Shown here: one piece after another, positions 30,706 to 62,297 of the stretch
Layout: the number at the start of each line of letters is the position of its first letter
Position numbering within the stretch: position 1 is the first letter of the stretch
IMG/VR virus record: IMGVR_UViG_3300005529_000001
Location: 248,001 to 312,000 of that record
Direction: 5' to 3' (one strand)
DNA length: 64,000 nucleotides
Program-made: the position numbers and the translations under genes
Notes under the pieces: generated by a model
What the model was told of the DNA's origin: nothing
Database searches by the model: none
The model's input: the letters and a program-made list of their open reading frames with translations, nothing else

Positions 30706-31023
30706 TCAGGCGGCCTTTTTCTCACCCTTGGAACTGAGAGAAACCACCTTGGGTTCCTTCTTGACACGCGGAACGTAAGAAGCGGGGGTGCTCAGCATGT
30801 TCTCAAGAACCTTCTCAAGCTCACCGAGGTGAGGAGTACAGGCATTGATCGCTGCTGGAGGGGCTTTTTCCTTGAATGATTCGACGGCCGCCAGGAGCTT
30901 GCTAGCAACGCCGACGATGCTGTTGATCGTCTTGTGATCAACCTGCTCGTTCACCGTTCGAACCTCTTCGGCGATGATCTCCTTGAGCCTCTCGAGCGTC
31001 ACCTTGGGGGTTTTAGTCGTCAT
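30706..31023 (-). CDS. Hypothetical head-associated protein
   Basis: VTLERLKEIIAEEV motif; TACTTA upstream; ends KKAA. Confidence 0.6.
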   Translation of the reverse strand: MTTKTPKVTLERLKEIIAEEVRTVNEQVDHKTINSIVGVASKLLAAVESFKEKAPPAAINACTPHLGELEKVLENMLSTPASYVPRVKKEPKVVSLSSKGEKKAA

Positions 31024-31062
31024 CGTGTCATCCTTCTGTGGTTGTAAGTATCCACTCTCGGA

Positions 31063-32709
31063 TCACTTCCTGAGCCAGTCGAAGTCCGAGACAAAACGAC
31101 CGTAGGGACTACGTTGCAATTCTTGTGGGTTTCGTGGCCGCATGACGCTGTACGCGTTGACGCCGGCGATGTTCGGGTCGACAAGCGGTTGGGCTTCGTT
31201 GATGTTCCCGGGCATCTTGTTGATGTCTTTCCTGTCCACGTGGGTGGCAGCTAACATTGCGTATGCCATCTCGCGCGCTTGTTCGCTGACCTGACCACCA
31301 CCTTCGATGAGCCATGTTCCGATCGCCAAGCTCAGGACCAGGTCATCCCACGAGTCCTTTCCCGCAAGAGCTTTGTTCCCTTCCCAGATGAACGACTGGA
31401 GCTGGTCAAACAGGCGTCGCGAATATGACCTCAGTTGCTTGTTCCTGATCAACTCTTCTAGCTTAGCCAAGATCTGTGTTCGGGTCTTCTGGTTTGTGTT
31501 TGGAAACCCAGGTAGCTCGTCCTTAGGATCGATGGGCATGTAGTTGAACGGGTCACCCGTGTGCTTGGGATAGTAGAGCTTTTTGTAGTTGATCTGGTCA
31601 CGTAGTTTCACACAGACCAGGTATCCGAAGGTGTTTTGTTCTGGGATTATGAGGGCATCGCAGTACTTTTTGCCCCACTCCGCTAGCAAGTCTGCCAAGT
31701 GCTCTGGCGGGATCTTACCCATGTACTCAGCACACACCTCATTGTCAACGGTGTCAATGACATGGAACGCTGAGTAGTCATGCGCATCACCACGGCTGAC
31801 GTCCGCGCTCAACACATAACGGTGACCCGCGACAGGCGGGCTCCAAACCCAGACACCGCCCGCAGGCCCCTCTTTCGAGATGGGTGGCATGATCATTTCA
31901 CGCAGGTAATCGAGCTCTTCGGGCTGGAGGAATGTGTCACCTGATGCAATGAAGTCACACATGAACTCTTGCGCAATCTGACGCTTGTTCATGCCCTTTG
32001 ATTCGTTCTTGAACCATGCTTCATCGTGTTCAGGATGGACGGTCCAGTGAAGCCGGATGGGGTTGAAGCCGTTGAGTCCCGCTTCGGCTTCCGTCCACAA
32101 ACGGTAATACTGCCCGCCGACGCCCTTGGGAGTCGATAGCACGATCGCCTTGCCACCCGTCGAGATCGTTGGTTTCAGACCCGTCCAGATCTCTTCAAAA
32201 TCACGAATGATAGCAGCTTCATCAACTATCAGAAGCGACAATGCTTCTGATCGGCCCGCATCTTCAGATGTTGGGATGGCAACAACCTGCGAGCCGTTGT
32301 CAAAAGTAATGGCTTGCTTGGTGGGCTCAAACTTGGGCAGCAACAACCACTTGGGCAAATTGTCAAGGATGACCTTGCACTTTTTGATCATGTTCATCGC
32401 GGTGGGAAGCTTGGTCGCGATGATGAGGATGTTCTGGTCCTTGTAAAAGATGGCGAGCCACGTTGCGTACGCTGCACATAACGTAGACAGACCCAGCTGT
32501 CTTGACTTCAAGATGATGTTAAGACGGTGTTCTATGAACTGCCTGACGCAGTCATCCTGAAACGGGTACGTTTCAAATGGGAGCAAGCCTCGAGCGGGGT
32601 GCTGGATCTTGCAATACTTCTTCATGAAGTAGACAGGATCCTTGCCACACTTGATTATCTCCTCGATCTGCTCCTGCTTTGACAGGGGTTTTGGAGCAGC
32701 TTTCGTCAT
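31063..32709 (-). CDS. gp17: Terminase large subunit (T4 gp17 family)
   Basis: KC.KDPVYF, LKSRQLGLST (Walker A), LLIVDEAA (Walker B), STPKG, QEF.C.F, ADVSRG..DYS, DDLV. Confidence 0.95.
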   Translation of the reverse strand: MTKAAPKPLSKQEQIEEIIKCGKDPVYFMKKYCKIQHPARGLLPFETYPFQDDCVRQFIEHRLNIILKSRQLGLSTLCAAYATWLAIFYKDQNILIIATKLPTAMNMIKKCKVILDNLPKWLLLPKFEPTKQAITFDNGSQVVAIPTSEDAGRSEALSLLIVDEAAIIRDFEEIWTGLKPTISTGGKAIVLSTPKGVGGQYYRLWTEAEAGLNGFNPIRLHWTVHPEHDEAWFKNESKGMNKRQIAQEFMCDFIASGDTFLQPEELDYLREMIMPPISKEGPAGGVWVWSPPVAGHRYVLSADVSRGDAHDYSAFHVIDTVDNEVCAEYMGKIPPEHLADLLAEWGKKYCDALIIPEQNTFGYLVCVKLRDQINYKKLYYPKHTGDPFNYMPIDPKDELPGFPNTNQKTRTQILAKLEELIRNKQLRSYSRRLFDQLQSFIWEGNKALAGKDSWDDLVLSLAIGTWLIEGGGQVSEQAREMAYAMLAATHVDRKDINKMPGNINEAQPLVDPNIAGVNAYSVMRPRNPQELQRSPYGRFVSDFDWLRK

Positions 32710-33089
32710 CAGCTGATCTCGAAGACAACCCTCCGGCGGTAGTAAGCAGTCCGCAGCGGGTTATGGACGTTCATGTTGATGATCTCCAAGTTGTCTACGC
32801 TTGAAAGCTCGGAGACCTTGAGTGTCAACCCAGAGAGATCCTTGTAGCGTGATTTGATGCTTGCCACTTCAGCGTCCAAAACCGACTCTGACTCTTGGAC
32901 ATGATCTCTTTTCGTCTGGATCATCTCTTTCTCAGTGACAAACTTTACGATGACAGCGTAAGAAGCCATCATCCGGTCGGGACCCAACATGCTCCACTTG
33001 ACAGAATACGCACAAGTTTTCGGAGTCGAAGACCGTCCCCAAGTCGTGTCTGTCGCCTGTCCGAGGGCGTTGTAATCGATGTCAGCCAT
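32709..33089 (-). CDS. Hypothetical protein upstream of terminase
   Basis: TACTTA motif plus GGAG SD; coupled to the terminase gene. Confidence 0.6.
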   Translation of the reverse strand: MADIDYNALGQATDTTWGRSSTPKTCAYSVKWSMLGPDRMMASYAVIVKFVTEKEMIQTKRDHVQESESVLDAEVASIKSRYKDLSGLTLKVSELSSVDNLEIINMNVHNPLRTAYYRRRVVFEIS

Positions 33090-33122
33090 GTGGCGGTGCT
33101 CCCGCAGATAAGTATAACCTGC

Positions 33123-33425
33123 TCAGTCTACGTCAAAGGTGATTGCCAGAGGGGGTCTCTGGGCCTCCAGCTGGTTGACTTGCTCGGCGGTTGGTCTCCA
33201 GCCCTCTTTCCACTGCACGGACCTGGGCTGTGCCCAGAACAGAGCGCAACGTTCACAACAGCCCACAGCACGCCAGGAAGCCTCATCGTCACGCGTCCGC
33301 ATCAAGCACTTGCAGACTGGACACGCTAGAGGAACGGGCGGCTCAGCGTCCGTTGGGACAATGACGACAAACCCCTCAGGTTGGTCTTCGATCAGACGGT
33401 CTCGGAGGTACGGTCTCCAGGCCAT
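33123..33425 (-). CDS. Small CxxC-CxxC zinc-finger protein
   Basis: CPVC...CERC. Confidence 0.55.
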   Translation of the reverse strand: MAWRPYLRDRLIEDQPEGFVVIVPTDAEPPVPLACPVCKCLMRTRDDEASWRAVGCCERCALFWAQPRSVQWKEGWRPTAEQVNQLEAQRPPLAITFDVD

Positions 33426-36016
33426 GCTTCACTGTACACCACCCGTGCATCCTTCTCGACCTTGTTCACCTCGATGATGTGGTCAGCAACGTCCTTGACA
33501 CCCTCGACATGAGTGATAACGATGATGGTCTTGAAGTACCTCTTCAGCGACATCAACAGCCGGTTGCACTGTTCGATCGAGGCTGGGTCCATCGGGCCAA
33601 ACGCTTCGTCAATGATGAACATGTCTGTCTTGGGCAACGATGAGAGATTGATCAGGGCGACACGGAGGGCAATGGAGGCCACTGTCTTCTCCATGCCCGA
33701 GCCTAGCTCGATCGGGCGGCGGCTGTCACCGTAGTTGATGTAAACTTCCATCGCATCGCTATCGTTGTCAACCTCAAGCTCGATGTTGAAATTGACAATG
33801 CCCGTGAGGATCTTGCTGATCTCCGCATTGATGACAGGTAACTGGCTGGTGATGATTAGGTTTGGTATTCCCTTCCGTGAGAAGGCTTGAGCGATCAACT
33901 CATGCGCTTTCATCAAGCCAAGCATCTTTTCACGTTGCTCGCGGTCCTGTTCCAGCTTATCATAGTTAGACTGTTCACGACCCTTCTTTGAAGCCAAGTC
34001 AAGTCTCTCACTGTCAACCTGACGGAGACGGCGGAGTAGGTCATCTTTCCGGTGACGAAGCGCAACTGCTTCAGCGTTCTCCTCGTTCTTAAGCGCTTCC
34101 TCGAGCTCAATGAGCTTCTGGTTCGCTTCTTTCACCCGAGGATAGAGGACGCTGTTGAGCTCGAGCATCTTCTTGTCATAATCACGTTGTTCGTCTGCTA
34201 ACTTGGTCAACAGGTCACCACGCATGTTACGCAGCTGGAGCAGCTTCGTTACCCGGTTGGACAGGTCCTCGTGGCGTAGCTCCACGAGCGCGTCATCTGC
34301 TTTGTTCAGCTTCTCCAACGCTTTTTCGACACGTTCCTTCTGCGGTTCGACCTTGTCTTTGACTTTATGCGCGTCCTTAATGAATCGGCAACCTGGGAAC
34401 TGATCACCACAGGGCACATCATCCAAGATTTTAAGCGACCGTTGTTGTTGCTTCAACAGGGCAGCTTCCTTTTCATGAACAACACGTAGCTGATCGACAG
34501 CGGCCTCAAGCGTCTTATAAGCCTCAAGCCTCTTCTTCAGTTCATCAACGTCATTGTCGCGGAGCAAAGCGTCAATGGTGCTGACCTTCTGTGACTTCTG
34601 GCTCATCGAGGTCACCAGGTCACTGATCTGTTCATTGACCTTGGCACCCTGGTCACGCAGTGACTGAAGATATGACCGTTGTTTCTCGACCTCCGTCGGG
34701 GTAACCATCACTACGTCCTTAAAGGACGATTCTTCTCGGGCAACATCGGTGAGCTGGACTTGGATGTCGTGCTTCTCGTGATCCTTGATCCCGATCTGGG
34801 CATCGAGGCTCTCGAGCGTTTCTTCAAACTTCCGTTGCGCCTCGGGCCAATCACGATCGGGCAATGACTTCAAGGCGGTTTTGTTAACGTTGACGTCATC
34901 CTTGGCTAGGTCATACATCTTGTCAAAGATGTCGAGATCCAAGAATCGTGCCACGGTCTGGCGCCGTTTGGTCGAGCCTTGGTTGATGTACTGTTTGATG
35001 TCGTCCTGTGCAGCGATGCTCGTCAGCAAGGCATCCTCGCCGCTGCCAATCAGCTTCCTGATGACACGGTCAGTGTCCTTACGTTCTTCACCACCCAAGT
35101 CTTCCAGTTCACCCCCATCGACAATTTTGAAGACATTAAGGTGAGTGTTAGCGTGCTGGCGGCCCCACTTGTCTTCGTGCTTAACGGTCTGGCGTTCGAT
35201 GATGTAGTCGCTGCCGCCCGAGTTGATGATGGCTCGGGCGTAAGCGTAGTCGTGCCGCACGTTGACAACATGGAGGTTCTTGATGCTACCGCGGTCCGAC
35301 GTGTTGAACAGGACGTACAGGATGGTACCCACCACTGACGACTTGCCCTGACGGTTGGGACCGAAGATGCCGACGATGCCATTCAGAGCATCGAAGTTGA
35401 TGATGTTCCCCTCACCGTACGCGAAACAGTTGTCCCACTTCAGGTTACGAAGTGTCCACTTGGTGTTCCGAGCCACCTCGTCGTTGCCCAGGACCTTGCC
35501 CAGGTAATGGATGATCTGATCACGAACAGCTTGCCATTCTGTCTCAGTAACGTGAGAAGACGTGTGATAGTCCTTCAGCAACCGTAACAGGACGTCCGGG
35601 TTGCGCAAGTCGTCCTTTGCAAGCGTCGCGGTACCAGCGCTGATCAGCTCCCTATCGAGTTGGTGATCTGTCTTGAAAGTCACCTCACTAGCTTTCAGCT
35701 GCTCTTGCAGCTGTGACATCAGCTTGGTCACTTCTTTTTGGGCCAGGATCTCTGTCTTGCTCCTGATGCGATACCGCGTACCAGGCGGGTAGTTAGCTAC
35801 CTTCTTCAGGGTCTTCTCAACGTCACCCGCCCAATCAACAGTCACAAACGGTTTCGGATTGGGCAGTTCTTCGAACTTGACATCAAACTTGTCCCTGTTC
35901 TCGATGTCCCACAACAGGTAACCGTGAACCAATGACTCGCCATAGTTTTGCTGGACCGGACTGCCGGGGTACGCGACCCACGGCCGCTTGACGCGGATCT
36001 TGATACGCTTGCTCAA
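33392..36016 (-). CDS. sbcC: SbcC/Rad50/gp46-like ATPase carrying the C-terminal part of SbcD at its N-terminus
   Basis: N-terminal YPGS..QQNYGE..HGYLLWD (SbcD C-half); Walker A GPNRQGKSS; coiled coil; GSGME signature; FIIDE Walker B; VITH; TTG start with GAGGTG SD. Confidence 0.9.
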   Translation of the reverse strand: MSKRIKIRVKRPWVAYPGSPVQQNYGESLVHGYLLWDIENRDKFDVKFEELPNPKPFVTVDWAGDVEKTLKKVANYPPGTRYRIRSKTEILAQKEVTKLMSQLQEQLKASEVTFKTDHQLDRELISAGTATLAKDDLRNPDVLLRLLKDYHTSSHVTETEWQAVRDQIIHYLGKVLGNDEVARNTKWTLRNLKWDNCFAYGEGNIINFDALNGIVGIFGPNRQGKSSVVGTILYVLFNTSDRGSIKNLHVVNVRHDYAYARAIINSGGSDYIIERQTVKHEDKWGRQHANTHLNVFKIVDGGELEDLGGEERKDTDRVIRKLIGSGEDALLTSIAAQDDIKQYINQGSTKRRQTVARFLDLDIFDKMYDLAKDDVNVNKTALKSLPDRDWPEAQRKFEETLESLDAQIGIKDHEKHDIQVQLTDVAREESSFKDVVMVTPTEVEKQRSYLQSLRDQGAKVNEQISDLVTSMSQKSQKVSTIDALLRDNDVDELKKRLEAYKTLEAAVDQLRVVHEKEAALLKQQQRSLKILDDVPCGDQFPGCRFIKDAHKVKDKVEPQKERVEKALEKLNKADDALVELRHEDLSNRVTKLLQLRNMRGDLLTKLADEQRDYDKKMLELNSVLYPRVKEANQKLIELEEALKNEENAEAVALRHRKDDLLRRLRQVDSERLDLASKKGREQSNYDKLEQDREQREKMLGLMKAHELIAQAFSRKGIPNLIITSQLPVINAEISKILTGIVNFNIELEVDNDSDAMEVYINYGDSRRPIELGSGMEKTVASIALRVALINLSSLPKTDMFIIDEAFGPMDPASIEQCNRLLMSLKRYFKTIIVITHVEGVKDVADHIIEVNKVEKDARVVYSEAWPGDRTSETV

Positions 36017-36660
36017 GCAATCACCTCAGCTTCTGGGTATTTTGCGAGTTCGCTCTCGTCAATCTCGAGCTCAACGTCTCGACCCGCTAGGAACTGCATC
36101 TTGTGAATGTCTCCAAGCAAGACAAAGTCCCAACCACGGAAGAACTCAACCGTGATGCCCTCTTCAACCAACCAGTCACTCTCGGTTGTTGCTCCCCACA
36201 CGGGACCGTGATAACACGCGATGTTGATCTTGCCGGGTACGGGCTTTACGTTGTCCCAGTTCGGTTCATCGAACAAGCTGAAGATGCCCCAGATATATCC
36301 GGGCGAAAACTCATACGTACCACTTTCCTTGTAGACGTGAATACGTGGGTTCTTCAACGCTTTGACGATGGGCGTCACCGCATCCAAACGTGACAGGTTG
36401 ACAAGGTTACCGTCGTGGTTTCCGAGAGTAAGATGCAGTTCAGCTGTCTCTGACAACGTTTCAAGCCACCAAACCATCTGTTCGATATACTCAGGCGACA
36501 AGCCTGAGGTCTTGGTGTGAAAGATGTCGCCTCCTACAAAGACGTGGTCAACCTTCTGTTCTTTGACCTGACGTGCAAAAGCAGAAAACACCTCTCGGTA
36601 TTCGTCGTGCCTCGATAGTCCTCGCCAGTGAACGTCGGCAGTGTGAGCGATCCTCAACAT
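36013..36660 (-). CDS. sbcD: SbcD/Mre11/gp47-like metallophosphoesterase nuclease, N-terminal part
   Basis: ADVH, GGDIFH, GNHD, YHG and GDIH motifs; ends before YPGS. Confidence 0.9.
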   Translation of the reverse strand: MLRIAHTADVHWRGLSRHDEYREVFSAFARQVKEQKVDHVFVGGDIFHTKTSGLSPEYIEQMVWWLETLSETAELHLTLGNHDGNLVNLSRLDAVTPIVKALKNPRIHVYKESGTYEFSPGYIWGIFSLFDEPNWDNVKPVPGKINIACYHGPVWGATTESDWLVEEGITVEFFRGWDFVLLGDIHKMQFLAGRDVELEIDESELAKYPEAEVIA

Positions 36661-36729
36661 CTGATCTACATCTGATCAGTACCGTGCCACCGAAAGGCTG
36701 TACAAGATCAAACTCTAGCACGCAAGCGT

Positions 36730-37734
36730 TCAACGTGAAAGAACGGTTCTTGACACAAAATCGAGCTTATCTCGAAACGATTCAAACCAAGAAAACGAAG
36801 GAGCGGAAGCAATCAGTTGCTTCATCTGTGCCTTCGTTAGGCTACCTGGATCGGCATCTTTGGGCAACCGAACAATTCTGACGGGTACATCGTAATCTAC
36901 TAGCTTCCTCGCAAGGACGGGTACCTTGGTGTACCTCATGTCATCATCCAGAGCTATCACGATGGGCGTGTTATGCGCAACGATAGCGTTAAACAACGTG
37001 CTCTCTTCGTTAAGATCGCTGCCTAACAGTGGAACAGAATTGTCTGGACACTTCACCAGATCGAAAGGACCCTCACACAAGACAAGCTCACGTGTCCAAT
37101 CGATATTCAGTTCATTGAAGATGATGGGTAGCTTGTCTTCATCTGGGTTGTCATACCGCTGTTTGAACTTGTCGATCGCTCTCCCCACGAAATAGTTCAA
37201 CTCCCCCTCGCCGTTGAAAGAGGGCATGATGACCCGTCGTTTCCACCTGGGATCATCGCTATATCCCAGCTTGAAATACCAGAGATCGCGTTCCGTCAAG
37301 CCACGACCCCTTGGCATCGGTTCCATCAAATACCGTCGCATCGCAAGGACATCAGGATCACGTAATGACGCAGTCGCCAGCAACTTGAAGTCCTTGGGTA
37401 AAGCCAGCTTTGGCTTCTCTTCCATGACGTCAATGATGAGACATCTCCGCCGGGGTCCCTCTTGGGCCGGCATGAACTTCTCAACGTACTCAAGCAGTTT
37501 GTCTCTGGTCGAGTATTTCTTCAGCAACGGTGCCAGGGTGTGAGCCTTGTACCCACACGACCAACAATGGCACCTGTCATCCTCGATCAGGATCGCTAGC
37601 TTCTTCTTGCTGTGATCTTTCGGAGCGCAGATGGGACAACGAACGTCAAAATTCTTGCCGTTCCTCGCTAGCTTTCCGCTGCCAAAACAGCTCTCGATGA
37701 ACCGAACTTTGTCTGAGATTGTGATCAGACCCAC
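36730..37734 (-). CDS. DNA primase-like protein (Zn finger + TOPRIM)
   Basis: CPIC..CWSC, LGY...RVIMP....YFVGR, LCEGPFD, ALDDD, DPG. Confidence 0.85.
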   Translation of the reverse strand: MGLITISDKVRFIESCFGSGKLARNGKNFDVRCPICAPKDHSKKKLAILIEDDRCHCWSCGYKAHTLAPLLKKYSTRDKLLEYVEKFMPAQEGPRRRCLIIDVMEEKPKLALPKDFKLLATASLRDPDVLAMRRYLMEPMPRGRGLTERDLWYFKLGYSDDPRWKRRVIMPSFNGEGELNYFVGRAIDKFKQRYDNPDEDKLPIIFNELNIDWTRELVLCEGPFDLVKCPDNSVPLLGSDLNEESTLFNAIVAHNTPIVIALDDDMRYTKVPVLARKLVDYDVPVRIVRLPKDADPGSLTKAQMKQLIASAPSFSWFESFRDKLDFVSRTVLSR

Positions 37735-37749
37735 GCGTCAATCGTAACC

Positions 37750-38352: not shown

Positions 38353-38388
38353 GCACAGATCGTGGCCCACAAACACTCACAGTAAACT

Positions 38389-38787: not shown

Positions 38788-38794
38788 GATGTCA

Positions 38795-41653: not shown

Positions 41654-41671
41654 GATTCCTGTCTAACTACC

Positions 41672-42493: not shown

Positions 42494-42528
42494 GGCAATA
42501 AGTACCACGCACACTGGCGTTAGCAACG

Positions 42529-43773: not shown

Positions 43774-43790
43774 GTATCAGGTCGCTCCGA

Positions 43791-44507: not shown

Positions 44508-44518
44508 TTGCCTAGCCC

Positions 44519-53676: not shown

Positions 53677-53685
53677 CTGATTACC

Positions 53686-54708: not shown

Positions 54709-54797
54709 CTTTCTCTACGACAAATATACCCCGAGCCCCATCCAGGGGCCGACTCGAGGCTTCACGAGATCAGATGTTGAGCATCATTTGGTTGCCG

Positions 54798-56174
54798 TCA
54801 GAGGATCTTAGACGCAAGAGTGGCAAGCTCCGATCTCTCGCCCTTGATGAGGGTGACATGGCCGGCGATAGGGTAATCTTTGAACCGCTCGACGGCGTAA
54901 GTCAACCCGTTAGTGAAAACATCCACATGAACGTTGTCAATCTGCTCAATATCACCCGTCAAGATGATTTTGGTGCCATCTCCCACACGAGTAATGATCG
55001 TCTTCAGCTCGTGCATCGACAGGTTCTGGGCTTCGTCGATGACAATGAAGGCGTTCGGGATCGACCTTCCCCTGATGAAAGTGATCGCTTCAATCTCAAT
55101 GAGACCACGCTCCTGCATCAGGTTCAGGTACATGTTATCGTCAAACGCTTGCTTTTCGTTGCCTGCACGCCGCTGTCTCTTGGGACGGTTCCTCTTGGTG
55201 TCCATCAGGAAGTTGAGGTTGTCACGGACGGGAGCGATCCACGGTTCCATCTTCTCCTCAAGGGTCCCTGGCAAAAAGCCAATGTCCTTACCAACGGGCT
55301 GGACTGGACGGGTGACGATCAGCTTGTCATACCGTGCAACAGCTGGGTTTCCTAACGTCTTCAGTTGCTCGAGACCTGCCGCAAGCGCGAGCAGCGTCTT
55401 GCCCGTGCCAGACGGGCCCACCAGCGTCAACAGCTTGATCTTTTCATCAAACAACAAATCAAGCGAGAACTGCTGTTCTTTGTTCCTGGGAGTCAAGCCA
55501 AACGCTTGTTCGATTTTCTCGACGGGAACAAGTGGCTTCTTGGGATCAATGCACTTCGCCAGGGCTGACTTGGTAGGTCGGCCATCGTCAAAAGCGTGCT
55601 TGATGACAACGATCTGGTTTGGGTACAGCTGATGATTACTTGTCAGGTCAAGCTCACCATGCTTGTAGAAGTGATCAATTCGTTCTTCTTCGAGCTCAAT
55701 CACTTCAACGCCACGGTAAAATTTCTGCGGGCTGTCAACAGCCACACGCATCTTTTTGTAGTCTTCACACTTGACACCGATGCTGTCACACTTGATCCTG
55801 ACGTTGATGTCCTTTGACACCAAGATAGAACCATCGACGTGTTTGGCATAAGCGATGATCATGTTGTCAGGCTTGCCCAGTTCTAGCCCAGGCAACTGGA
55901 CGTCTTTGATGGCGTCCATTCGCCCTACCTTTAGGGTCCCACCCTCGTGCAGCTGGACACCTGCGTAGAGACCGCCTCGTTCTCGAAGAGTGTCGAGCGA
56001 TCGGGTCACTTGACGCGCATTACGTCCGACTTCATCGGGTCGGCTCTTGTGACGATCTAGCTCTTCTAAGACAATCATCGGGATGATGACGTCATTTTCT
56101 TCAAATGAAAAGATCGAGTTCGGATCGCTTAGAAGGACGTTGGTATCAAGGACGTACGTCTTCTTCTGGCTCAT
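54798..56174 (-). CDS. phoH: PIN-domain PhoH-family ATPase
   Basis: VLDTNVLL, ELD, D..I, SKDINVR (PIN); GPSGTGKT, IGFLPG..EKMEPW, RGRSI, DEAQN, TRVG...LTGD..QID (PhoH). Confidence 0.92.
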   Translation of the reverse strand: MSQKKTYVLDTNVLLSDPNSIFSFEENDVIIPMIVLEELDRHKSRPDEVGRNARQVTRSLDTLRERGGLYAGVQLHEGGTLKVGRMDAIKDVQLPGLELGKPDNMIIAYAKHVDGSILVSKDINVRIKCDSIGVKCEDYKKMRVAVDSPQKFYRGVEVIELEEERIDHFYKHGELDLTSNHQLYPNQIVVIKHAFDDGRPTKSALAKCIDPKKPLVPVEKIEQAFGLTPRNKEQQFSLDLLFDEKIKLLTLVGPSGTGKTLLALAAGLEQLKTLGNPAVARYDKLIVTRPVQPVGKDIGFLPGTLEEKMEPWIAPVRDNLNFLMDTKRNRPKRQRRAGNEKQAFDDNMYLNLMQERGLIEIEAITFIRGRSIPNAFIVIDEAQNLSMHELKTIITRVGDGTKIILTGDIEQIDNVHVDVFTNGLTYAVERFKDYPIAGHVTLIKGERSELATLASKIL

Positions 56175-56286
56175 GAGATTTATTGTTCTTTCTGTTGGTG
56201 CGTTGTGCACTGTTGGTTCTTTCCCTTTGGTTTCTTGAACATAGAAAGGGCCAACCATTACATTCTAATCATCTGGTGGGTTATCC

Positions 56287-56574
56287 ATGCAAGAAGGCAA
56301 GAAACGTCTGAAGATCATTCAGCCCAACGTTACGGGCAACCGCGTCGTTGATGGGACAACGTGTTTTGCAGTACAAGCCAAGGCCGGGATAGACTGCCAG
56401 CGAAAACGATGTCCGCATTGGATCCAGTTCAAGGAGGGTCACAATTGCGTTCACATCGCTTCTCAAAACGGCCCACACACTCTTCAACGAATCGGACAGA
56501 TCTATGGGCTAACTCGCATGCGTATCTGTCAGATCGAGAAGGCCATTTTTGAAAAGATCCGCCGCGTCAGCTGA
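56287..56574 (+). CDS. Sigma-70 region 4 HTH protein with Cys/His-rich N-terminus
   Basis: HTLQRIGQIYGLTRMRICQIEKAIFEKIR matches the region 4.2 pattern (TL.EIG..F.VTRERIRQIE..AL.KLR); C..C...C..C.H upstream. Confidence 0.75.
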   Translation: MQEGKKRLKIIQPNVTGNRVVDGTTCFAVQAKAGIDCQRKRCPHWIQFKEGHNCVHIASQNGPHTLQRIGQIYGLTRMRICQIEKAIFEKIRRVS

Positions 56575-57034
56575 CGGGCTCTTCTTTTTCACCAGGCTTC
56601 TCTTCGACTTTCGGCTCGTTCTTGGCCGCTTCGACAACGGGTGCCAGTTTTACTTCGTCAGTTGGTTTCTCAACTGGCTTGGAAGCTTCGACTGTTGGAA
56701 CAGGCTTCGCTTCAAGCTTGACAACATCAACGGACTTAGCGGTTTCTTTGTTGCTCTCAGAGACGACAGGAGCCGGCTTAGAAATTACGACTTTCTTGGG
56801 TAGCTCGACCTTCTTTGTGGGCATCGAAACAACTGGAGCTACCGTTGTTGGGGTCTCGACAGCCTCCAGAGAGGCCGCCTGATGGAAACCCATGTGATAT
56901 TGGTTACCTGCCGGCTTGGCTCCCGCCTTGGGATTTGGGGTGATGCGCCCAGCCTTGTCGGTGATGGACCAAGCTTTGGTTGGGTCAAGGTTGAGATCGT
57001 GAATGTCGGCTAGGACTGCGCGAGGTGCGGGCAT
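56567..57034 (-). CDS. Hypothetical Pro/Lys/Glu-rich protein
   Basis: Start ATG 57034 with GGAG SD and TATTTA motif. Confidence 0.55.
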   Translation of the reverse strand: MPAPRAVLADIHDLNLDPTKAWSITDKAGRITPNPKAGAKPAGNQYHMGFHQAASLEAVETPTTVAPVVSMPTKKVELPKKVVISKPAPVVSESNKETAKSVDVVKLEAKPVPTVEASKPVEKPTDEVKLAPVVEAAKNEPKVEEKPGEKEEPVS

Positions 57035-57067
57035 CTGTTGTCTCCGCCTGTAAATAGGCTTCAGAGA

Positions 57068-57099
57068 CGACGAAGCCCCAGCGATCACCGCCAGGGCCA
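57068..57099 (-). terminator. Hairpin after the histone-like gene
   Basis: GGCCCTGGCG-GTGAT-CGCTGGGGCT followed by TCGTCGT, similar tail to the capsid-gene hairpin. Confidence 0.5.
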
Positions 57100-57132
57100 A
57101 GCCACAGTAGGTATCCGAGAGATCGAAGCTGT

Positions 57133-57363
57133 TTAAGCAGCCTTCTTGTCCTTCTTCGGTTTCGAAGCCTTCGAAGCCTTGTCTGTCTCGACCGTCATCT
57201 TGACAAGCGAAGCCGCAAGGCTCTTCAGCTCACGCAGGCCCTTACGAGCACGGACGCCTGCAGCAGCTGTGCCCCGAGCGTTCTTGACCACGTCAAGCTC
57301 AAGCTCTTCAACGAGCTTCTTCAGTTCAGTCCACTTCTCGAGAACGAGATTGGTGCCTTCCAT
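57133..57363 (-). CDS. Histone H1-like (Hc1-type) DNA-binding protein
   Basis: D..K...G..AAGVRARKGL.ELK motif; GGAGG SD. Confidence 0.75.
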   Translation of the reverse strand: MEGTNLVLEKWTELKKLVEELELDVVKNARGTAAAGVRARKGLRELKSLAASLVKMTVETDKASKASKPKKDKKAA

Positions 57364-57443
57364 TGGTAGTGTCCTCCAGCCATAAGTATACAGCCTGACG
57401 ACTAGCCGTAAAACAAATGGCGGCTTCAGCGCGCGCGAGAGCC

Positions 57444-59129
57444 CTACTGAAGCGCTGAGGAAAACTCCGCCGGAAACATCTTAGCGTTGGTCCGGAAGAA
57501 CCGCTCCCAATCACTGTCAAGGATGTATGACGTGGCATGGTCGGTGTCATTGCGGATCGATCTCCCAAAGGCTTGGATGACTGCTCGGGCCGTCATCATC
57601 GCGTACCAGTTGGAGTTCTTGGCTTTTCGCAACTGGATGACTCGGTCACCCAAGTATGGGAACGGAACCTTGCAGAGGATCTGGAACCTGCTTGCGTCAT
57701 CGGCGAGGTCAACGCCCTCAGTCATCGACGGGCTGATGAGGACAGTGGGCTCATCGCTAGCCATGTGTCGTTCAATGGTTTCATCGCGGTTCTCGCTGTT
57801 GTGTAACAACAACCGTTTGTTCTTCAGTTTCTCGACCAGGTACTGAGCGATCCGGTAGTTGACACAGTGGATGATGCCTTTTTCCTTGGCATGGAGGTCG
57901 AGCAAGTCCTTCACAGTCGACGCCAATACGGGCAATGTCGCATCGATCTGGTTCATCGACATGCTACCAACACCAAGGTAGTGGATGGGACGGTTCTCTT
58001 TCGGGAACGGTGAGGGTAGTTGTAAGTACGCCGCGTCGTTTGGGTCAATGCCCACCGACTTGCAGAAAGTGTCCTTGTCAACAACGGTCGCTGACATCAG
58101 GAGAGTTCGAGTCCCATAGTGATACAGGTGACTCTCACCGAAAGCGGCGACGTCGACAGGCTTGAATTCAAACTTGCGGCCGCCACGAGTCCCCTCAGGG
58201 GCCTTCACGAAATTCATGACCCAACTGTCTGGGGAATACGACTCAATGAAGCGATTGACTTTACAGATGTGCTTGTCAAGCATCTCGTACCGCTTGCTCA
58301 TCTCGCCAAGGCCTGACGTGACGTTACCGCTAAAGTGTTTGGAGAGCTCTTTCTCGAGCCCCTTCATCTGCCTTGCGACGGTGTTCTTGTATGGTCCTTT
58401 CACCCACTCGAAGACCCGTTCAGGCGAGTCGAGCCTGGGGACTTTGCAACCCAGGGCCTTGGCGAACTTCTCAGAAAAGGTGACCTCGACGAACTTACCA
58501 AGCTCGCTTTCGATATTGTGACACTCGTCAATGACCAGCAATGCACGTGGTTGGAGCTGCTTGGCATACATCGTCTCAGCCAAAAAGTACGAGTTGTTGG
58601 TGATTCCGATCGGGTGCTCAAGGAACTCTGACTTGTCGATCATGTATGGGCACGAACCCCGGCAACACTTGTGGAAGTCGGTCCCCTCCAGCTGCTTACC
58701 CAGCTGCTTGAGCAGGCGTCGGCTCTCGGCACACGATTGGTCGCTGTAGAATCTGCACTCGTAGTTAGAAGCCGACTTCAGAGACCGCATTAGGTTCCGG
58801 CCGCTGCTCGGGCCAAAGTCCTTCATGTATTGCTCTTGCAAAATCTTCTGGGTCGTCAGGACGTATGCACCCGACGTCTCAACATCGTCCCCATCTTCAA
58901 AACCCGGGAGAGGAGGCGCGAATGTGCGTTCGCCCTGTGCTTCAAGAACACGAGCTAACGTGATGCCGATGGCACTCTTTCCGCAGCCGGTACCCAGCTC
59001 TAAAATAACAAACCGCTTCTTCTGGTTCAAGAAGGCATCCAGGGCGAACTCGATCGCTTGGTGTTGCTCTTGCCTTACCGATGAGAAGGGAAAGTATGGG
59101 CGGTAATCGGGCACTGGCATGTCAGCCAC
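57444..59129 (-). CDS. DinG/XPD-like Fe-S ATP-dependent DNA helicase
   Basis: GTGCGKS, LQEQY, Cys cluster, IDECH, MSAT, PSPF, EGVDL, KVPFP, QAFGRSIR..D. Confidence 0.9.
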   Translation of the reverse strand: MADMPVPDYRPYFPFSSVRQEQHQAIEFALDAFLNQKKRFVILELGTGCGKSAIGITLARVLEAQGERTFAPPLPGFEDGDDVETSGAYVLTTQKILQEQYMKDFGPSSGRNLMRSLKSASNYECRFYSDQSCAESRRLLKQLGKQLEGTDFHKCCRGSCPYMIDKSEFLEHPIGITNNSYFLAETMYAKQLQPRALLVIDECHNIESELGKFVEVTFSEKFAKALGCKVPRLDSPERVFEWVKGPYKNTVARQMKGLEKELSKHFSGNVTSGLGEMSKRYEMLDKHICKVNRFIESYSPDSWVMNFVKAPEGTRGGRKFEFKPVDVAAFGESHLYHYGTRTLLMSATVVDKDTFCKSVGIDPNDAAYLQLPSPFPKENRPIHYLGVGSMSMNQIDATLPVLASTVKDLLDLHAKEKGIIHCVNYRIAQYLVEKLKNKRLLLHNSENRDETIERHMASDEPTVLISPSMTEGVDLADDASRFQILCKVPFPYLGDRVIQLRKAKNSNWYAMMTARAVIQAFGRSIRNDTDHATSYILDSDWERFFRTNAKMFPAEFSSALQ

Positions 59130-59160
59130 ACCATACCCAACGCTGTGTGGTTTCTACAAC

Positions 59161-59766
59161 TCAGGCACCGATGATCTTGTCAACAATGCCTAGCTTGATC
59201 GCGTCTTCGGGTGTCAAAAAGTAGTCAAGCATCGGGCGCATAAAGTCCTTCTCTACTTTCTCCTTTGACATCTTTGTCTCTTTCACGAGAGCGCTGACCA
59301 TCAGCTCCTGGAGCCGGCGCGCTTCTTTTGTCTCGTTTTCCATCTCAAAGATGTTTCCCATGACGCCTCCTGAGATCGGGTGGATCATGATGCGTGCAGA
59401 TGCACCGATCAACCGCTTGCCCTTGACTCCAGATGCCAGCAAGAGCACGCCTGCCGACATCACCTTTCCCAAACCCACCGTGTGAACGGGACACGGCAAA
59501 AACTTGAGGATGTCATAGAGAGAAAACATCTCGTCAACGCTGCCACCGTAGGTTGACACAACAAGATAGATCGGGTTCCGATTCAGGTTAGCGAGGTGTA
59601 GTAATTGCGCGATAACATTCGCAATCGAGTGTTCGCTGACCTCGCTATGCAAGTACACGATCCGAGTGTTGTCTACTTGCGACGCTAGAGCACGAGTGAG
59701 ATGCTCGATCTGATCTTCTTCTTCCGCAGTGACACGGTTCCGGTTTTCAAGCGTCGCTCGACCCAT
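59161..59766 (-). CDS. clpP: ClpP-like protease proteolytic subunit
   Basis: RIVYL, STYGGSV, VHTVGLG.VMSAG (Ser), IMIH (His), D.FLTPEDAIKLGIVDKI (Asp). Confidence 0.9.
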   Translation of the reverse strand: MGRATLENRNRVTAEEEDQIEHLTRALASQVDNTRIVYLHSEVSEHSIANVIAQLLHLANLNRNPIYLVVSTYGGSVDEMFSLYDILKFLPCPVHTVGLGKVMSAGVLLLASGVKGKRLIGASARIMIHPISGGVMGNIFEMENETKEARRLQELMVSALVKETKMSKEKVEKDFMRPMLDYFLTPEDAIKLGIVDKIIGA

Positions 59767-60001
59767 CTGGACCTCCCATTACAAACAGATCTTCGCCACC
59801 CAACTCACGAACGAGCTTGGTGATCGCCTTCATCTGTTCAACATTCTCGAGTTCTGAGCTCAACAGGTAGACAAGAAACAACGTCTGACGTTGTGTCAAG
59901 CCTCCTTGCAAGTTGATTTCACGCACAATCTGGCGACAGTGCTCGTTTTCTTCGGCACGTTTTTCAGATTGCATCTGCCCATAGCGCACCGCGTCAGTCA
60001 C
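59747..60001 (-). CDS. Hypothetical protein
   Basis: Operon packing upstream of clpP. Confidence 0.55.
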   Translation of the reverse strand: MTDAVRYGQMQSEKRAEENEHCRQIVREINLQGGLTQRQTLFLVYLLSSELENVEQMKAITKLVRELGGEDLFVMGGPDGSSDA

Positions 60002-60468
60002 TTGACGACCTCTTCTTCACGTTCAAACCCGGCAACATCAAACATGTTTTCACCCAAGATACGAACGTACTTACCGGAACGGGTTCCAGCATCAGTGTCA
60101 GATGCCAAAACCACGAACTCTCCCCACTTCTTGTTGTCATAGATGTGTTTAGCCATCTCCCACGTTGGAAGGTCACAATCACTGCCCTCCAAGATGTCAG
60201 CCAACCTGGGTGCAAGCGATGCTTTGATATCAGCGATCGTCACAATTGAGTTCATCGATTCCTTGCCGCTGATGATCTCTGAACGGTTGATCTCCACCAC
60301 ACGGTGGACGATGCCACAGTTATTGCACTGAGCATACTTTGGGATCACAGTATCATCGTCAGCAACGACAGAAAACACGGTGAACTGGTGCAAGGGTGGC
60401 GAGGCTGCCCGTTTGAACTGCGGCAACGTGCAACGACACGTCACCAGGTGCTTCAAGCCCATTGACAT
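59998..60468 (-). CDS. Hypothetical Cys-containing (Zn-binding) protein
   Basis: CRC...H...CNNC..H.. Confidence 0.6.
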   Translation of the reverse strand: MSMGLKHLVTCRCTLPQFKRAASPPLHQFTVFSVVADDDTVIPKYAQCNNCGIVHRVVEINRSEIISGKESMNSIVTIADIKASLAPRLADILEGSDCDLPTWEMAKHIYDNKKWGEFVVLASDTDAGTRSGKYVRILGENMFDVAGFEREEEVVK

Positions 60469-60513
60469 CAGTTCACCCTCTCAGGGCGTGCCATGCTGCC
60501 GCCAGCCTGGTTT

Positions 60514-60804
60514 TCAGGGGCGGCCTGCGTTTTTTTTCGCTGTTGACTGTTCACGAGCAAGGGCGGCGGGAGCCGCAACGACGGCCTGGTCAACAACCTT
60601 GCAGTATGACCGGAACCCACGATGGTAGCCTTCCTCAAGGGAGGCGTTGATGATCGCCATCAACTTTGTGACTTCCTCGGGCTTGATGTCAAGCTGCGAA
60701 GCTCGCAATGCTTGCGTCACGTTCGTTGACACGGCGTCTTTCATGCCCTCCATCAACGTCCAAGAGGCTTTGCTCAGCATGTCGCGCGGGTTCTTCTCTC
60801 CCAT
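60514..60804 (-). CDS. Hypothetical protein
   Basis: TAGAAT and GGAAGG SD upstream. Confidence 0.55.
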   Translation of the reverse strand: MGEKNPRDMLSKASWTLMEGMKDAVSTNVTQALRASQLDIKPEEVTKLMAIINASLEEGYHRGFRSYCKVVDQAVVAAPAALAREQSTAKKNAGRP

Positions 60805-60866
60805 GGTGCACCTTCCAACATTCTAGCTGCCTACTTAGAGCCAGTAAACCAGCAGAGGGGATCTCG

Positions 60867-62297
60867 ATGGCACCATCGCTCAAAGAACGGTACGACCAAC
60901 GCCAGCTGCAACTGCTCCAGGAACACACCAGAGCAGCTGACGCGCAACTGTTGCAAGAACAACAAACCGCTGAGTTGTTGCTCGAAGCGATGGATCCTGA
61001 AGACTTGCAAAAAGTCACCGCGATCGTTCAGAAACTAGACACGATCAAATCTCCAGAGCTTCCTCACCTGTCACAAGCGATCGAACAAGCCCAGGCTGAA
61101 CTAAACAAGTACACGGGTGGTGGGCCCATTGCTGCGGCTTGGTCCAAGCTAAAGACCAAGGTCGGTATCGATAACCCGGTCGTCAAGGTCACCACGTTTG
61201 CCGACGCTCTCGAGCGTGGGTTTTCACAGATCCCAACGATCTTGAAAAACAATGGGGTTGACCTCGCAAAAACGGATCTCAACAAGAGCTTGTCGACCAC
61301 GTTACAAACACAACAGCCCACTGGTGCTGGTGATGGTGAAGGCGGGACCAAGTCAAACGTTACAGGCAAAGCGAATGACAAGGAAGACCTTGAATACAAG
61401 CCCACGCCCAAGAAGATCGGGGCCAAGAGCGATGAAGAGCTGGGCAAAGCTCGCTTTGGTGACAACAGGAAGAACGACGAGACCCACTACGACATTCCAG
61501 GTCCATCTGGGACCCAACCCGGGACCAAGCCAGGAACTGCCCCTGCAACGGCAAAGAAACCGCCGCCAGCACAGCGCACAGGAGGCCAGGACCAGCCACC
61601 AAAACCCGCTCCTGGGGTGAAAAAACCGCTAGCAGCTAGCAGGAAGATCTCATCGGCTGACGAGGGACACAACCTTGATGAGGCAGGGCCGAGCGCGAGC
61701 GTTTCGGGTGATCAAAAGCTGAAGAACATTGTCGCTCAAATACGCAAAGCCCTAGCGCCGGGAGGCTTGTTTGGGGCATTCAAACGAATCCCATACATCG
61801 ATAGCGCTGCGCTTGCTCAAGAGCTTGTCCAAGCGCCAATCAAGGTCTTTTCGAACGTTGCAAAACGCATCCAAGCAGGAGCAAAAGCATCTGAGATCGC
61901 GCCTGACATGCGTAACCAGATCCAGGGCCAGGGTGACCAACAGACAAAGCACGCGAACACAGCGACTCCCACCAAACAAGCTGGGCAATCGCAACCCGGA
62001 CAGCCAGCCAAGCCGACCACGGCTACGACTGACACGACGAGCACCGGACAGCAGCCTCCCAAGGGTCCGGGTGAAAAACGTGGTGGTGGAGCCGAAGCGA
62101 AAAGCCCGAGCGAAGCGGGCGGAACATCTCCCTCTCAAAAAGCCCAGCAGTTTCGTTCGGGTCTTGACAAGATCTACAAGGGAGCCGGCGTTGATGCCAA
62201 CATGGGCCAGAAGCTCTTGAAGTACCTCATCAACAACAAACTCCTGGACCGCGGTGCCGTTGAAACACACGGTGCTGGTGAACCAAAAGCAGCCTAG
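60867..62297 (+). CDS. Hypothetical late protein with low-complexity linkers (possible head-internal protein)
   Basis: Start ATG 60867 with GAGGGG SD and TACTTA on the plus strand; LQE/LLE/LDE motifs; ends PKAA. Confidence 0.65.
   Translation: MAPSLKERYDQRQLQLLQEHTRAADAQLLQEQQTAELLLEAMDPEDLQKVTAIVQKLDTIKSPELPHLSQAIEQAQAELNKYTGGGPIAAAWSKLKTKVGIDNPVVKVTTFADALERGFSQIPTILKNNGVDLAKTDLNKSLSTTLQTQQPTGAGDGEGGTKSNVTGKANDKEDLEYKPTPKKIGAKSDEELGKARFGDNRKNDETHYDIPGPSGTQPGTKPGTAPATAKKPPPAQRTGGQDQPPKPAPGVKKPLAASRKISSADEGHNLDEAGPSASVSGDQKLKNIVAQIRKALAPGGLFGAFKRIPYIDSAALAQELVQAPIKVFSNVAKRIQAGAKASEIAPDMRNQIQGQGDQQTKHANTATPTKQAGQSQPGQPAKPTTATTDTTSTGQQPPKGPGEKRGGGAEAKSPSEAGGTSPSQKAQQFRSGLDKIYKGAGVDANMGQKLLKYLINNKLLDRGAVETHGAGEPKAA

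What the first reader, a model, noticed from the sequence alone, without database searches (positions are those of the whole stretch)
30706..62297. Several phage proteins end in ssrA-like -K-A-A degrons in a genome encoding tmRNA and ClpP
Seen: 30706..31023 ends EKKAA, the histone-like 57133..57363 ends DKKAA, 60867..62297 ends EPKAA, and 24782..25276 ends TKKTA. The tmRNA tag ends RLAA. The three -KAA genes each have the TACTTA motif upstream. Known: ClpX recognises a free C-terminal Ala-Ala. Inference: hard-coded degrons could time the turnover of late proteins, or act as decoys saturating host ClpXP, working with the phage ClpP as a phage-run proteolysis circuit.
Basis: partly seen in the sequence, partly recalled or inferred. 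Interest (0 to 1): 0.6.

Follow-up and report, generated by a model that had tools for sequence, protein, structure and literature searches.

The report
Alanine-alanine protein tails in a huge phage
Three proteins of this 369-kb phage do end in -Lys-Ala-Ala, but two of these tails are chance ends of lysine/alanine-rich tails; only the one on an orphan late protein is kept by selection, and it does not track the phage's own ClpP.

Summary
The three ORFs end EKKAA, DKKAA and EPKAA and a fourth ends TKKTA. A tmRNA (tag ...VRLAA) and a ClpP with an intact catalytic triad are present. TACTTA precedes all three -KAA genes.

The proposed multi-protein degron circuit is not supported:
- In my own 499-gene call, -AA ends number 8 against about 4 expected (P 0.04-0.09, uncorrected).
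- A related 340-kb phage has 6 against 3.4.
- No ortholog pair keeps an -AA end in both genomes.
- Relatives of the 105-aa protein (4/94 end -AA) and of the Hc1 histone-like protein (6/121) do not keep it. Their nearest kin end -KE, -DE or -AS.
- The phage has no ClpX, ClpA or SmpB.
- ClpP sits beside the third gene in relatives whatever that protein's end, and is missing from one -AA phage.

One part survives. The 476-aa orphan protein (60867-62297) belongs to a subclade of 13 sequences, 51-84% identical. The last residue is Ala in 13/13 and the penultimate in 12/13. The preceding 13 positions are only 5-22% identical, and all four Ala codons are used. That terminal Ala-Ala is under selection. 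An ssrA-like (ClpX C-motif-1) signal is plausible but untested.

TACTTA is a real, conserved, late-promoter-like motif.

The parts
60867..62297 (+). Orphan late protein ('fam3', 476 aa). It has a helical N-terminal domain, disordered linkers, a C-terminal three-helix bundle and a floppy tail ending ...EPKAA. This is the only -AA end that is conserved.
   Evidence: Translation. 101 homologues plus the window's own entry. In the 13-sequence subclade, position -1 is Ala in 13/13 and -2 in 12/13, while -3 to -15 are 5-22% identical. The penultimate Ala uses GCA, GCC, GCG and GCT. In the AlphaFold2 model the last 3 residues have pLDDT below 50. No Pfam, PHROG or fold match.
60832..60837 (+). TACTTA promoter-like motif, 35 nt before the fam3 start codon.
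   Evidence: The motif occurs within 80 nt upstream of the gene in 14 of 15 relatives from IMG/VR, and at -33 to -35 in all five loci where its position was measured.
57133..57363 (-). Hc1-type histone H1-like protein (76 aa) with a Lys/Ala/Pro-rich tail ending DKKAA.
   Evidence: PF07432, E 1e-9. Of 121 family members 6 end -AA and 37 end -KA. The nearest relatives (86-95% identical) end -AAS, -PAA, -AEV and -VTV.
57383..57388 (-). TACTTA motif, 25 nt before the Hc1 start codon.
   Evidence: It sits at the same position in 3 of 4 relatives.
30706..31023 (-). 105-aa protein of unknown function between the large terminase and the portal, with a basic tail ending EKKAA.
   Evidence: Neighbours: TerL at 31063-32709 and T4-type portal at 28509-30659. 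Of 94 family members 4 end -AA. The nearest relatives (78-88% identical) end -KE, -DE or -SE.
31045..31050 (-). TACTTA motif, 27 nt before the start codon of the 105-aa gene.
24782..25276 (-). 164-aa head-module protein ending WADLAFMATKKTA. It has no -AA end.
   Evidence: In 45 distinct relatives the conserved part is WADLAFM, then 2-4 residues, then KK plus 0-2 residues (KK x10, KKTA x5, KKF x5, AA x1).
17088..17457 (-). Phage-encoded one-piece tmRNA, tag ANDNGFADDVRLAA.
   Evidence: ARAGORN. Rfam RF00023, 87 bits, full length. No SmpB in the genome.
59161..59766 (-). Cellular-type ClpP (201 aa) with Ser-His-Asp in place. It lies in an operon with three small ORFs and a helicase, and has no TACTTA upstream.
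   Evidence: PF00574, 145 bits. It scores 138 bits against NCBIfam ClpP models but only 48 bits against the head-maturation ClpP-related model. Alignment to PDB 3q7h. Upstream sequence.
26993..27652 (-). T4 gp21-type prohead protease (Peptidase_S77). This is the actual head-maturation protease, so ClpP is not it.
   Evidence: PF03420, E 1.7e-24; phrog_207, E 1.3e-43.

Best explanation
The window lies in a complete 369-kb T4-like huge phage. The phage carries its own tmRNA, about 55 tRNAs and a cellular-type ClpP.

Two of the three -KAA ends are accidental. They belong to the 105-aa protein next to the terminase and to the Hc1 histone-like protein. Both have short, basic, Lys/Ala-rich tails whose last residues drift freely among relatives.

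The third -AA end, on the 476-aa orphan late protein, is different. Selection keeps a terminal Ala-Ala at the tip of an otherwise fast-changing, disordered tail, within one subclade of these phages (shown). The most likely role of that dipeptide is a C-terminal recognition signal of the ssrA / ClpX C-motif-1 kind. It would be read by a host unfoldase such as ClpX or ClpA and would limit the amount or lifetime of this late protein (inferred, not shown).

This signal is not tied to the phage ClpP. ClpP is a clade-wide core gene, present whatever the tail is. There is no genome-wide system of hard-coded degrons.

TACTTA is a clade-conserved promoter element of about 21 mostly structural genes. 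This explains why the three genes share it.
For: Chance and composition:
- -AA ends are 8/499 against 3.8-4.6 expected (P 0.04-0.09). KK, TP and DE ends are more enriched.
- The related phage G001 has 6/417 against 3.4 (P 0.13).
- 0 of 8 ortholog pairs keep -AA in both genomes, against a baseline of 30/210 pairs with the same last two residues.
- Relatives of the 105-aa protein end -AA in 4/94 cases, and relatives of Hc1 in 6/121.

Selection on the 476-aa protein:
- 12 of 13 subclade members end -AA and one ends -SA. Overall identity in the subclade is 51-84%.
- Tail positions -3 to -15 are 5-22% identical and the tails differ in length.
- The penultimate Ala uses all four synonymous codons.
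- In the same close phages the other two tails changed although those proteins are 78-95% identical.
- The tail tip is disordered in the model.

Degron plausibility:
- A terminal Ala-Ala is necessary for ssrA-like ClpXP degrons (PMC10862746).
- E. coli C-motif-1 substrates include NAA, PAA and EAA ends (PMC9775585, table 2).

Independence from the phage ClpP:
- ClpP is next to the gene in 5/6 -AA lineages and in 10/13 others (Fisher P 1.0).
- G001 has both tmRNA and ClpP, yet its homologue ends -VKK.

Promoter motif:
- 24 of 44 TACTTA sites fall in the 13.6% of the genome that is intergenic.
- 20-21 genes have it 5-46 nt before the start codon, among them the gp23-like capsid gene.
- It is conserved in relatives.
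Against: - Pooling both genomes gives 14 -AA ends against 7.3 expected (P 0.018). A small real excess of -AA ends is therefore not excluded.
- -KAA is 3 against 0.2 expected, and 3 of 21 TACTTA genes end -AA (Fisher P 0.003). Both tests were chosen after seeing the data.
- The degron reading of the 476-aa protein rests on motif resemblance only.
- Five of the 13 subclade tails have Pro, Asn or Ser at position -3. Pro and short polar residues were disfavoured there in an E. coli screen, and none has the favoured Leu (PMC10862746).
- Other subclades of the family also have conserved ends (-KL, -PE, -LK, -SH). The C-terminus may matter for binding rather than for turnover.
- Host, host ClpX and expression timing are unknown.
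- The gene set is my own simple caller, not a curated annotation.
Confidence: 0.65

Rival explanations
1. One reading: several late proteins carry hard-coded ssrA-like degrons. Together with the phage tmRNA and the phage ClpP they form a phage-run proteolysis circuit, either timing late-protein turnover or acting as decoys that saturate host ClpXP.
For: All components exist in one genome. The three genes share a late-promoter-like motif. -KAA is nominally over-represented. KKAA-type tails resemble both ClpX C-motif-1 (xAA) and C-motif-2 (KKAx) (PMC9775585, table 2). Phage G also combines tmRNA, ClpP and ClpX (PMC12484599).
Against: Two of the three tails are not conserved even in relatives 78-95% identical. 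No -AA end is shared between orthologs of two related genomes. Enrichment is marginal. There is no ClpX, ClpA or SmpB in the complete genome. ClpP lacks the TACTTA motif, lies in a different operon, and is present or absent independently of the tail.
Confidence: 0.07
2. The conserved Ala-Ala of the 476-aa protein is a docking or structural motif and has nothing to do with proteolysis. A small C-terminal carboxylate peg could bind a partner such as a capsid or assembly protein, or the product of the convergent neighbouring gene.
For: Every subclade of the family has its own conserved C-terminal ending (-DxxKL, -ALKxPE, -GYLK, -KLxSH). This suggests the C-terminus is an interaction surface in general. 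The residues at -3 are not those of strong E. coli degrons (PMC10862746). The gene has a structural-gene-type promoter.
Against: In the other subclades the conserved end is part of the predicted helix. Here the AA sits at the tip of a variable, disordered extension, which is more typical of a terminal tag. No partner is known. Nothing was tested.
Confidence: 0.22
3. All -AA ends, including that of the 476-aa protein, are neutral. The subclade simply inherited AA from a recent ancestor.
For: 11 of the 12 -AA enders fall in one clade, and the 12th (P0237) is placed elsewhere only with weak support. A single origin is therefore not excluded. Alanine is a common residue in this 56% GC genome (8% of residues).
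Against: Across the same sequences the adjacent tail positions are 5-22% identical and differ by insertions and deletions, while -1 and -2 are 100% and 92% Ala. The penultimate codon has been through all four synonymous states.
Confidence: 0.06

Closest known systems
ssrA tag and other ClpX C-motif-1 degrons (E. coli ssrA ...YALAA; natural substrates ending LAA, NAA, PAA, EAA)
   Same: A free C-terminal Ala-Ala sits at the end of an unstructured tail. The 476-aa protein's subclade shows -KAA, -PAA, -NAA, -SAA, -AAA and -VAA. The phage's own tmRNA tag ends -RLAA.
   Different: No degradation was shown. The tails lack the antepenultimate Leu that makes the tag strong, and the upstream residues are polar or charged (PMC10862746). 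The tails are encoded in the gene rather than added by trans-translation.
[quoted passage not shown]
   Same: The tails ...TKKTA (24782-25276)...EKKAA and ...DKKAA share the Lys-Lys, small residue, small or hydrophobic end (PMC9775585, table 2). Relatives of the 164-aa protein keep KK near the end.
   Different: In that family only the KK is conserved. The last 0-2 residues vary or are absent. Basic tails are also ordinary nucleic-acid- or capsid-binding elements. Not tested.
Bacillus megaphage G, which has tmRNA, ClpP and ClpX (PMC12484599)
   Same: A very large phage encoding a tmRNA and a cellular-type ClpP in addition to a separate head-maturation protease.
   Different: Phage G also encodes ClpX. 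This phage has none, only one unrelated classical AAA ATPase.
Chlamydial Hc1 / histone H1-like proteins (Pfam PF07432)
   Same: 57133-57363 matches the Hc1 domain and has the typical Lys/Ala/Pro-rich tail.
   Different: It is very short (76 aa) and phage-encoded. Its tail end is simply low-complexity sequence.

Membership tests
ssrA-like ClpX C-motif-1 degron | Free C-terminal Ala-Ala | tested here: met
   Three ORFs end -KAA. This is a necessary feature only (PMC10862746).
ssrA-like ClpX C-motif-1 degron | Favourable upstream residues (Leu at -3; hydrophobic, Ala or Arg at -4 and -5), which make the tag strong in E. coli | tested here: not met
   The tails are E-K-K-A-A, D-K-K-A-A and E-P-K-A-A. 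Subclade residues at -3 are K, A, P, N, S and V. The consensus is [LFYW][LAR]LAA (PMC10862746). Weaker natural substrates with NAA, PAA or EAA ends do exist (PMC9775585).
ssrA-like ClpX C-motif-1 degron | Conservation of the terminal AA among homologues | tested here: inconclusive
   Met for the 476-aa protein's subclade (12/13). Not met for the 105-aa protein (4/94) or Hc1 (6/121). Not met between orthologs of two genomes (0/8).
ssrA-like ClpX C-motif-1 degron | ClpX- or ClpA-dependent degradation that is abolished by an AA-to-DD change | not testable with these tools
   Needs a stability assay in vivo or in vitro.
ClpP (peptidase S14, cellular type) | CLP_protease domain over its full length, with the Ser-His-Asp triad | tested here: met
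   PF00574, 145 bits, profile positions 9-179 of 182. In the alignment to PDB 3q7h, Ser (GKVMSAG), His (MIHP) and Asp (LDYF) are in place. The score is below the NCBIfam equivalog cut-offs (138 against 228 bits), so it is a divergent member.
ClpP (peptidase S14, cellular type) | A partner Clp unfoldase (ClpX, ClpA or ClpC) encoded alongside | tested here: not met
   No AAA_2 (PF07724) or TIGR00382 match in the complete genome. The only classical AAA protein resembles Cdc48 and FtsH. A host partner would be needed.
ClpP-related phage head-maturation protease | Sits in the head module and serves as the only prohead protease | tested here: not met
   A T4 gp21-type S77 protease lies in the head module at 26993-27652. 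ClpP lies between a helicase and small ORFs, 30 kb away. It scores 48 bits against the head-maturation model, cut-off 120.
tmRNA (Rfam RF00023) | Full-length match above the gathering score, with a tag reading frame | tested here: met
   87 bits against a gathering score of 47, model positions 1-374. The tag is ANDNGFADDVRLAA.
Hc1 histone H1-like (PF07432) | Hc1 domain above the gathering score | tested here: met
   38.6 bits against 23.5. All 120 listed homologues carry PF07432.

The most novel reading that the evidence does not exclude
In one subclade of uncultured T4-like huge phages, a clade-specific late protein of unknown fold carries a gene-encoded, selection-maintained ssrA-like Ala-Ala tag. 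The phage would use this tag to have the protein destroyed on schedule by a hybrid machine made of host ClpX or ClpA and the phage's own ClpP. That would make it a disposable assembly or takeover factor with a built-in timer. The same phages reprogram ribosome rescue with their own tmRNA, whose tag (...RLAA) feeds the same protease.
Probability: 0.12. Interest if true: 0.7.

Novelty: new member of a known kind. Interest (0 to 1): 0.3.

Why it matters
A phage that timed its late proteins with hard-coded ssrA-like tags and its own ClpP would be a new layer of viral control over host proteostasis. The evidence here says that such a system does not exist as a genome-wide feature. Short Lys/Ala-rich tails produce -KAA ends by chance, and they are lost as easily as they arise.

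What remains worth a bench test is narrow: one orphan late protein whose last two alanines are held by selection. The phage clade also keeps a cellular-type ClpP and a tmRNA as core genes but has no unfoldase of its own. This raises the separate, testable question of whether a viral ClpP can pair with a host ClpX or ClpA.

Tried and rejected
- ClpP as the prohead protease: rejected. A gp21-type S77 protease sits in the head module.
- Window as a prophage at a host ssrA gene: rejected. The record is a complete 369-kb phage with terminal repeats.
- TAG recoding altering the C-terminus. A tRNA with anticodon CTA exists. Rejected for these genes: TGA, TAG and TAA stops number 409, 46 and 44 with long intact ORFs, and relatives of the 476-aa protein stop with TAA at the same place.
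- The overlap with the convergent gene forcing Ala-Ala: rejected. Only the third base of the last codon lies in the 4-nt CTAG overlap.
- Function of the 476-aa protein: no answer. There was no hit in Pfam, PHROGs or NCBIfam, none in the ESM Atlas, none by Foldseek against PDB or BFVD, and only Z up to 5.6 on single helices with VIA-align. There was no tblastn hit in 50,697 GenBank phage records.
- The search for related loci with the single protein found nothing. The alignment query found 15 loci.
- An adaptor (ClpS- or SspB-like) among the small ORFs next to ClpP: no Pfam hit.
- Searches in relatives for the other -AA proteins: three of the five handles were not held, and one protein gave no match.
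- Complex prediction, read laying and the large representative search were not used. No binding claim is made, and relatives were already plentiful.


Full report
**What the window is.** The 64-kb window is bases 248,001-312,000 of a single 369,475-bp contig. Its ends repeat each other, and the collection rates it a complete virus with direct terminal repeats. It encodes about 55 tRNAs and one tmRNA. It has a T4-type large terminase at 31063-32709, a T4 gp20-type portal at 28509-30659, a gp21-type prohead protease at 26993-27652 and a gp23-type major capsid protein at 19737-21659. It is therefore an uncultured T4-like huge phage, not a prophage at a host ssrA gene. The nearest capsid genes in GenBank phages are only 34-50% identical.

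**The observation.** Every sequence fact in the finding is correct.
- The four ORFs end EKKAA, DKKAA, EPKAA and TKKTA.
- The 76-aa protein is an Hc1-type histone H1-like protein.
- The tmRNA at 17088-17457 is a full-length RF00023 match with tag ANDNGFADDVRLAA.
- ClpP at 59161-59766 is a strong CLP_protease match with Ser, His and Asp in place.
- TACTTA precedes the three -KAA genes by 27, 25 and 35 nt.

**Is it more than chance?** I called genes with a simple codon-bias caller. It gave 499 genes, 86% coding, with 409 TGA, 46 TAG and 44 TAA stops.
- Eight proteins end -AA. The expectation is 3.9 from internal dipeptide frequency, 4.6 from tail dipeptide frequency and 3.8 from position-specific frequencies (P 0.045, 0.090 and 0.039).
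- AA is not among the twelve most over-represented C-terminal dipeptides. KK leads that list.
- As a replicate I fetched a related 340-kb phage, G001. It has 6 of 417 against 3.4 expected (P 0.13).
- Pooled, the two genomes give 14 against 7.3 (P 0.018). This is a consistent excess of just under twofold and is weak.
- The -KAA count (3 against 0.2) and the share of -AA ends among TACTTA genes (3/21 against 5/478, Fisher P 0.003) look stronger. Both were chosen after the pattern had been seen.

- Relatives of the 105-aa protein: 4 of 94 end -AA. The nearest ones (78-88% identical) end -KE, -DE or -SE, which are acidic ends.
- Relatives of Hc1: 6 of 121 end -AA and 37 end -KA. The nearest (86-95% identical) end -AAS, -PAA, -AEV and -VTV. 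The tail is ordinary Lys/Ala/Pro low-complexity sequence.
- Between this genome and G001 there are 210 reciprocal-best pairs, median 53% identical. Eight pairs have an -AA end on one side and none has it on both. The same last two residues occur in 30 of 210 pairs overall.
- Of the other -AA proteins, one (genome 994-1869) has a relative that also ends ...NGDIAA within a generally conserved stretch. Another (genome 84120-85250) has a relative ending -AVE.

**The exception.** The 476-aa protein at 60867-62297 has 101 homologues in the search besides its own database entry, all from metagenomes and none named.
- The subclade comprises P0218 itself, its eleven nearest full-length relatives (52-65% identical to it) and a more distant one, P0237. 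Twelve of these 13 end -AA and one ends -SA.
- In a tree, 11 of the 12 -AA enders fall in one clade. Other clades end -KL, -PE, -LK or -SH.
- Right-justified, position -1 is Ala in 13/13 and -2 in 12/13. Positions -3 to -15 have a pairwise identity of 0.05-0.22, and the tails differ in length.
- In the four members ending -AA for which DNA could be read, the penultimate Ala is GCA, GCC, GCG and GCT.
- In these same close phages the other two proteins, although far more similar overall, have already changed their ends.
- The last Ala codon's third base lies in a conserved 4-nt CTAG/CTAA overlap with the stop codon of the convergent gene. That constrains one base, not the amino acids.
- Relatives that stop with TAA at the same place show that the C-terminus is real despite the phage's CTA-anticodon tRNA.

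I conclude that the terminal Ala-Ala of this protein is under purifying selection in its subclade.

**What that protein is.** An AlphaFold2 model built from 93 relatives (mean pLDDT 70) shows the following:
- a 40-residue N-terminal helix;
- helical segments at 43-150 and 281-360;
- two long disordered linkers;
- a confident three-helix bundle at 422-470;
- a tail whose last three residues have pLDDT below 50.

No family or fold match was found, and there was no hit in 50,697 GenBank phage records. The gene carries the TACTTA element, as the capsid gene does. A late assembly or structural role is my inference only.

**The link to ClpP.** ClpP is not the head protease. A gp21-type S77 protease sits in the head module, and ClpP scores far better against cellular ClpP models than against the head-maturation model.

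The complete genome has no ClpX or ClpA (AAA_2, TIGR00382) and no SmpB. It has one classical AAA ATPase, nearest to Cdc48 and FtsH, at genome 136348-137904.

The gene order is conserved across relatives: PhoH, a sigma-70 region-4 ORF, one small ORF, Hc1, helicase, ClpP, three small ORFs, then the divergently transcribed 476-aa gene.
- ClpP lies there in 5 of 6 lineages with an -AA end. The phage carrying P0227 lacks it.
- ClpP lies there in 10 of 13 lineages with other ends (Fisher P 1.0).
- G001 has both ClpP and a tmRNA (tag ...LRLAA), while its homologue ends -VKK.
- ClpP has no TACTTA upstream.

So ClpP and the tmRNA are clade-wide core genes. They do not covary with the tail.

**Comparison with known degrons.** In an E. 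coli screen a terminal Ala-Ala was necessary but not sufficient. The strong consensus was [LFYW][LAR]LAA, and Pro, His, Gly and short polar residues were disfavoured at -3 (PMC10862746).
- The phage tmRNA tag (...VRLAA) fits that consensus. The gene-encoded tails do not.
- Even so, ClpXP-trapped E. coli proteins of the C-motif-1 class include ends NAA, PAA and EAA. The C-motif-2 class is RRKKAI, RAKKVA and HIKKAS (PMC9775585, table 2; PMC12723719).
- Tails of the KKAA and KKTA kind therefore resemble known weak signals.
- For the 164-aa head-module protein (24782-25276), 45 distinct relatives keep WADLAFM followed by KK. The last 0-2 residues vary. The conserved element is thus the basic pair, which could equally be a binding motif.
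- Phage G shows that the combination of tmRNA, ClpP and ClpX in a very large phage is already on record (PMC12484599).

**TACTTA.** The hexamer is rare overall: 44 sites on both strands against about 113 expected. Yet 24 sites lie in the 13.6% of the genome that is intergenic. Twenty to twenty-one genes have it 5-46 nt before the start codon, usually followed by a Shine-Dalgarno sequence. They include the capsid gene and several genes of about 1000 codons. It is kept upstream of the 476-aa gene in 14 of 15 relatives, at the same position in all five loci where that was measured, and before Hc1 in 3 of 4. It is most simply a late-promoter element. That explains the shared motif without invoking a proteolysis regulon.

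**Verdict.** The multi-protein degron and ClpP circuit is not supported. One conserved C-terminal Ala-Ala on an orphan late protein is real and deserves a stability assay. Interest is modest.

Noticed in passing
window 19633-19638, 21678-21683, 23853-23858, 31045-31050, 33109-33114, 57383-57388 (all -) and 60832-60837 (+); about 21 genes genome-wide: (A)TACTTA is a promoter-like element. It is depleted overall but concentrated 5-46 nt before start codons, among them the gp23-like capsid gene. It is conserved in related phages. It is probably this clade's late promoter.
   Followed up: partly
window 56287-56574 (+): A 95-aa ORF matches only sigma-70 region 4 (PF04545, E 1e-8). It is present at the same syntenic place in all relatives examined. 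It could be a small phage transcription factor or sigma appropriator.
   Followed up: partly
genome 36781-36856 and 336639-336792 (outside the window): A tRNA with anticodon CTA (amber-suppressor type) and two adjacent tRNA-like genes that ARAGORN reads with a four-base 'ttca' anticodon. TAG nevertheless behaves as an ordinary stop codon (46 of 499 genes).
   Followed up: partly
window 25280-25774 (-) and 25774-26535 (-): A peptide deformylase (PF01327, E 5e-47) and a GIY-YIG homing endonuclease sit inside the T4-like head module, between the prohead protease and the capsid gene.
   Followed up: no
window 24782-25276 (-); loci L049-L103: The 164-aa head-module protein belongs to a family with a conserved C-terminal WADLAFM, then 2-4 residues, then KK and 0-2 further residues. 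This resembles ClpX C-motif-2 ends such as YbaQ RAKKVA, but it may simply be a basic binding tail.
   Followed up: partly
genome 136348-137904 (-), locus L002: A 518-aa protein with one classical AAA domain (PF00004), nearest to Cdc48/VCP and FtsH ATPase domains. It is the only candidate unfoldase in a genome that has ClpP but no ClpX or ClpA.
   Followed up: partly
window 62294-62297: The 476-aa gene and the convergent 398-aa gene (62294-63490, with a weak PHROG hit to a GroEL-like family) overlap by four bases, CTAG, so the two stop codons share bases. A 4-nt overlap is seen in most relatives examined; two overlap by more (17 and 24 nt).
   Followed up: partly
window 17088-17457 (-); G001 309392-309751: The phage tmRNA has no phage SmpB partner. 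The tag ends ...RLAA in both related phages (ANDNGFADDVRLAA and ANDNGALPLRLAA), which fits the strong ClpXP consensus.
   Followed up: partly
locus L004 17623-17859 and the same place in other relatives: Downstream of the syntenic block, relatives carry a glycosyltransferase and methyltransferase cluster that includes a 78-aa ORF with the Pfam Acb5 domain (PF26761). The corresponding region of this genome starts beyond the window's end.
   Followed up: no
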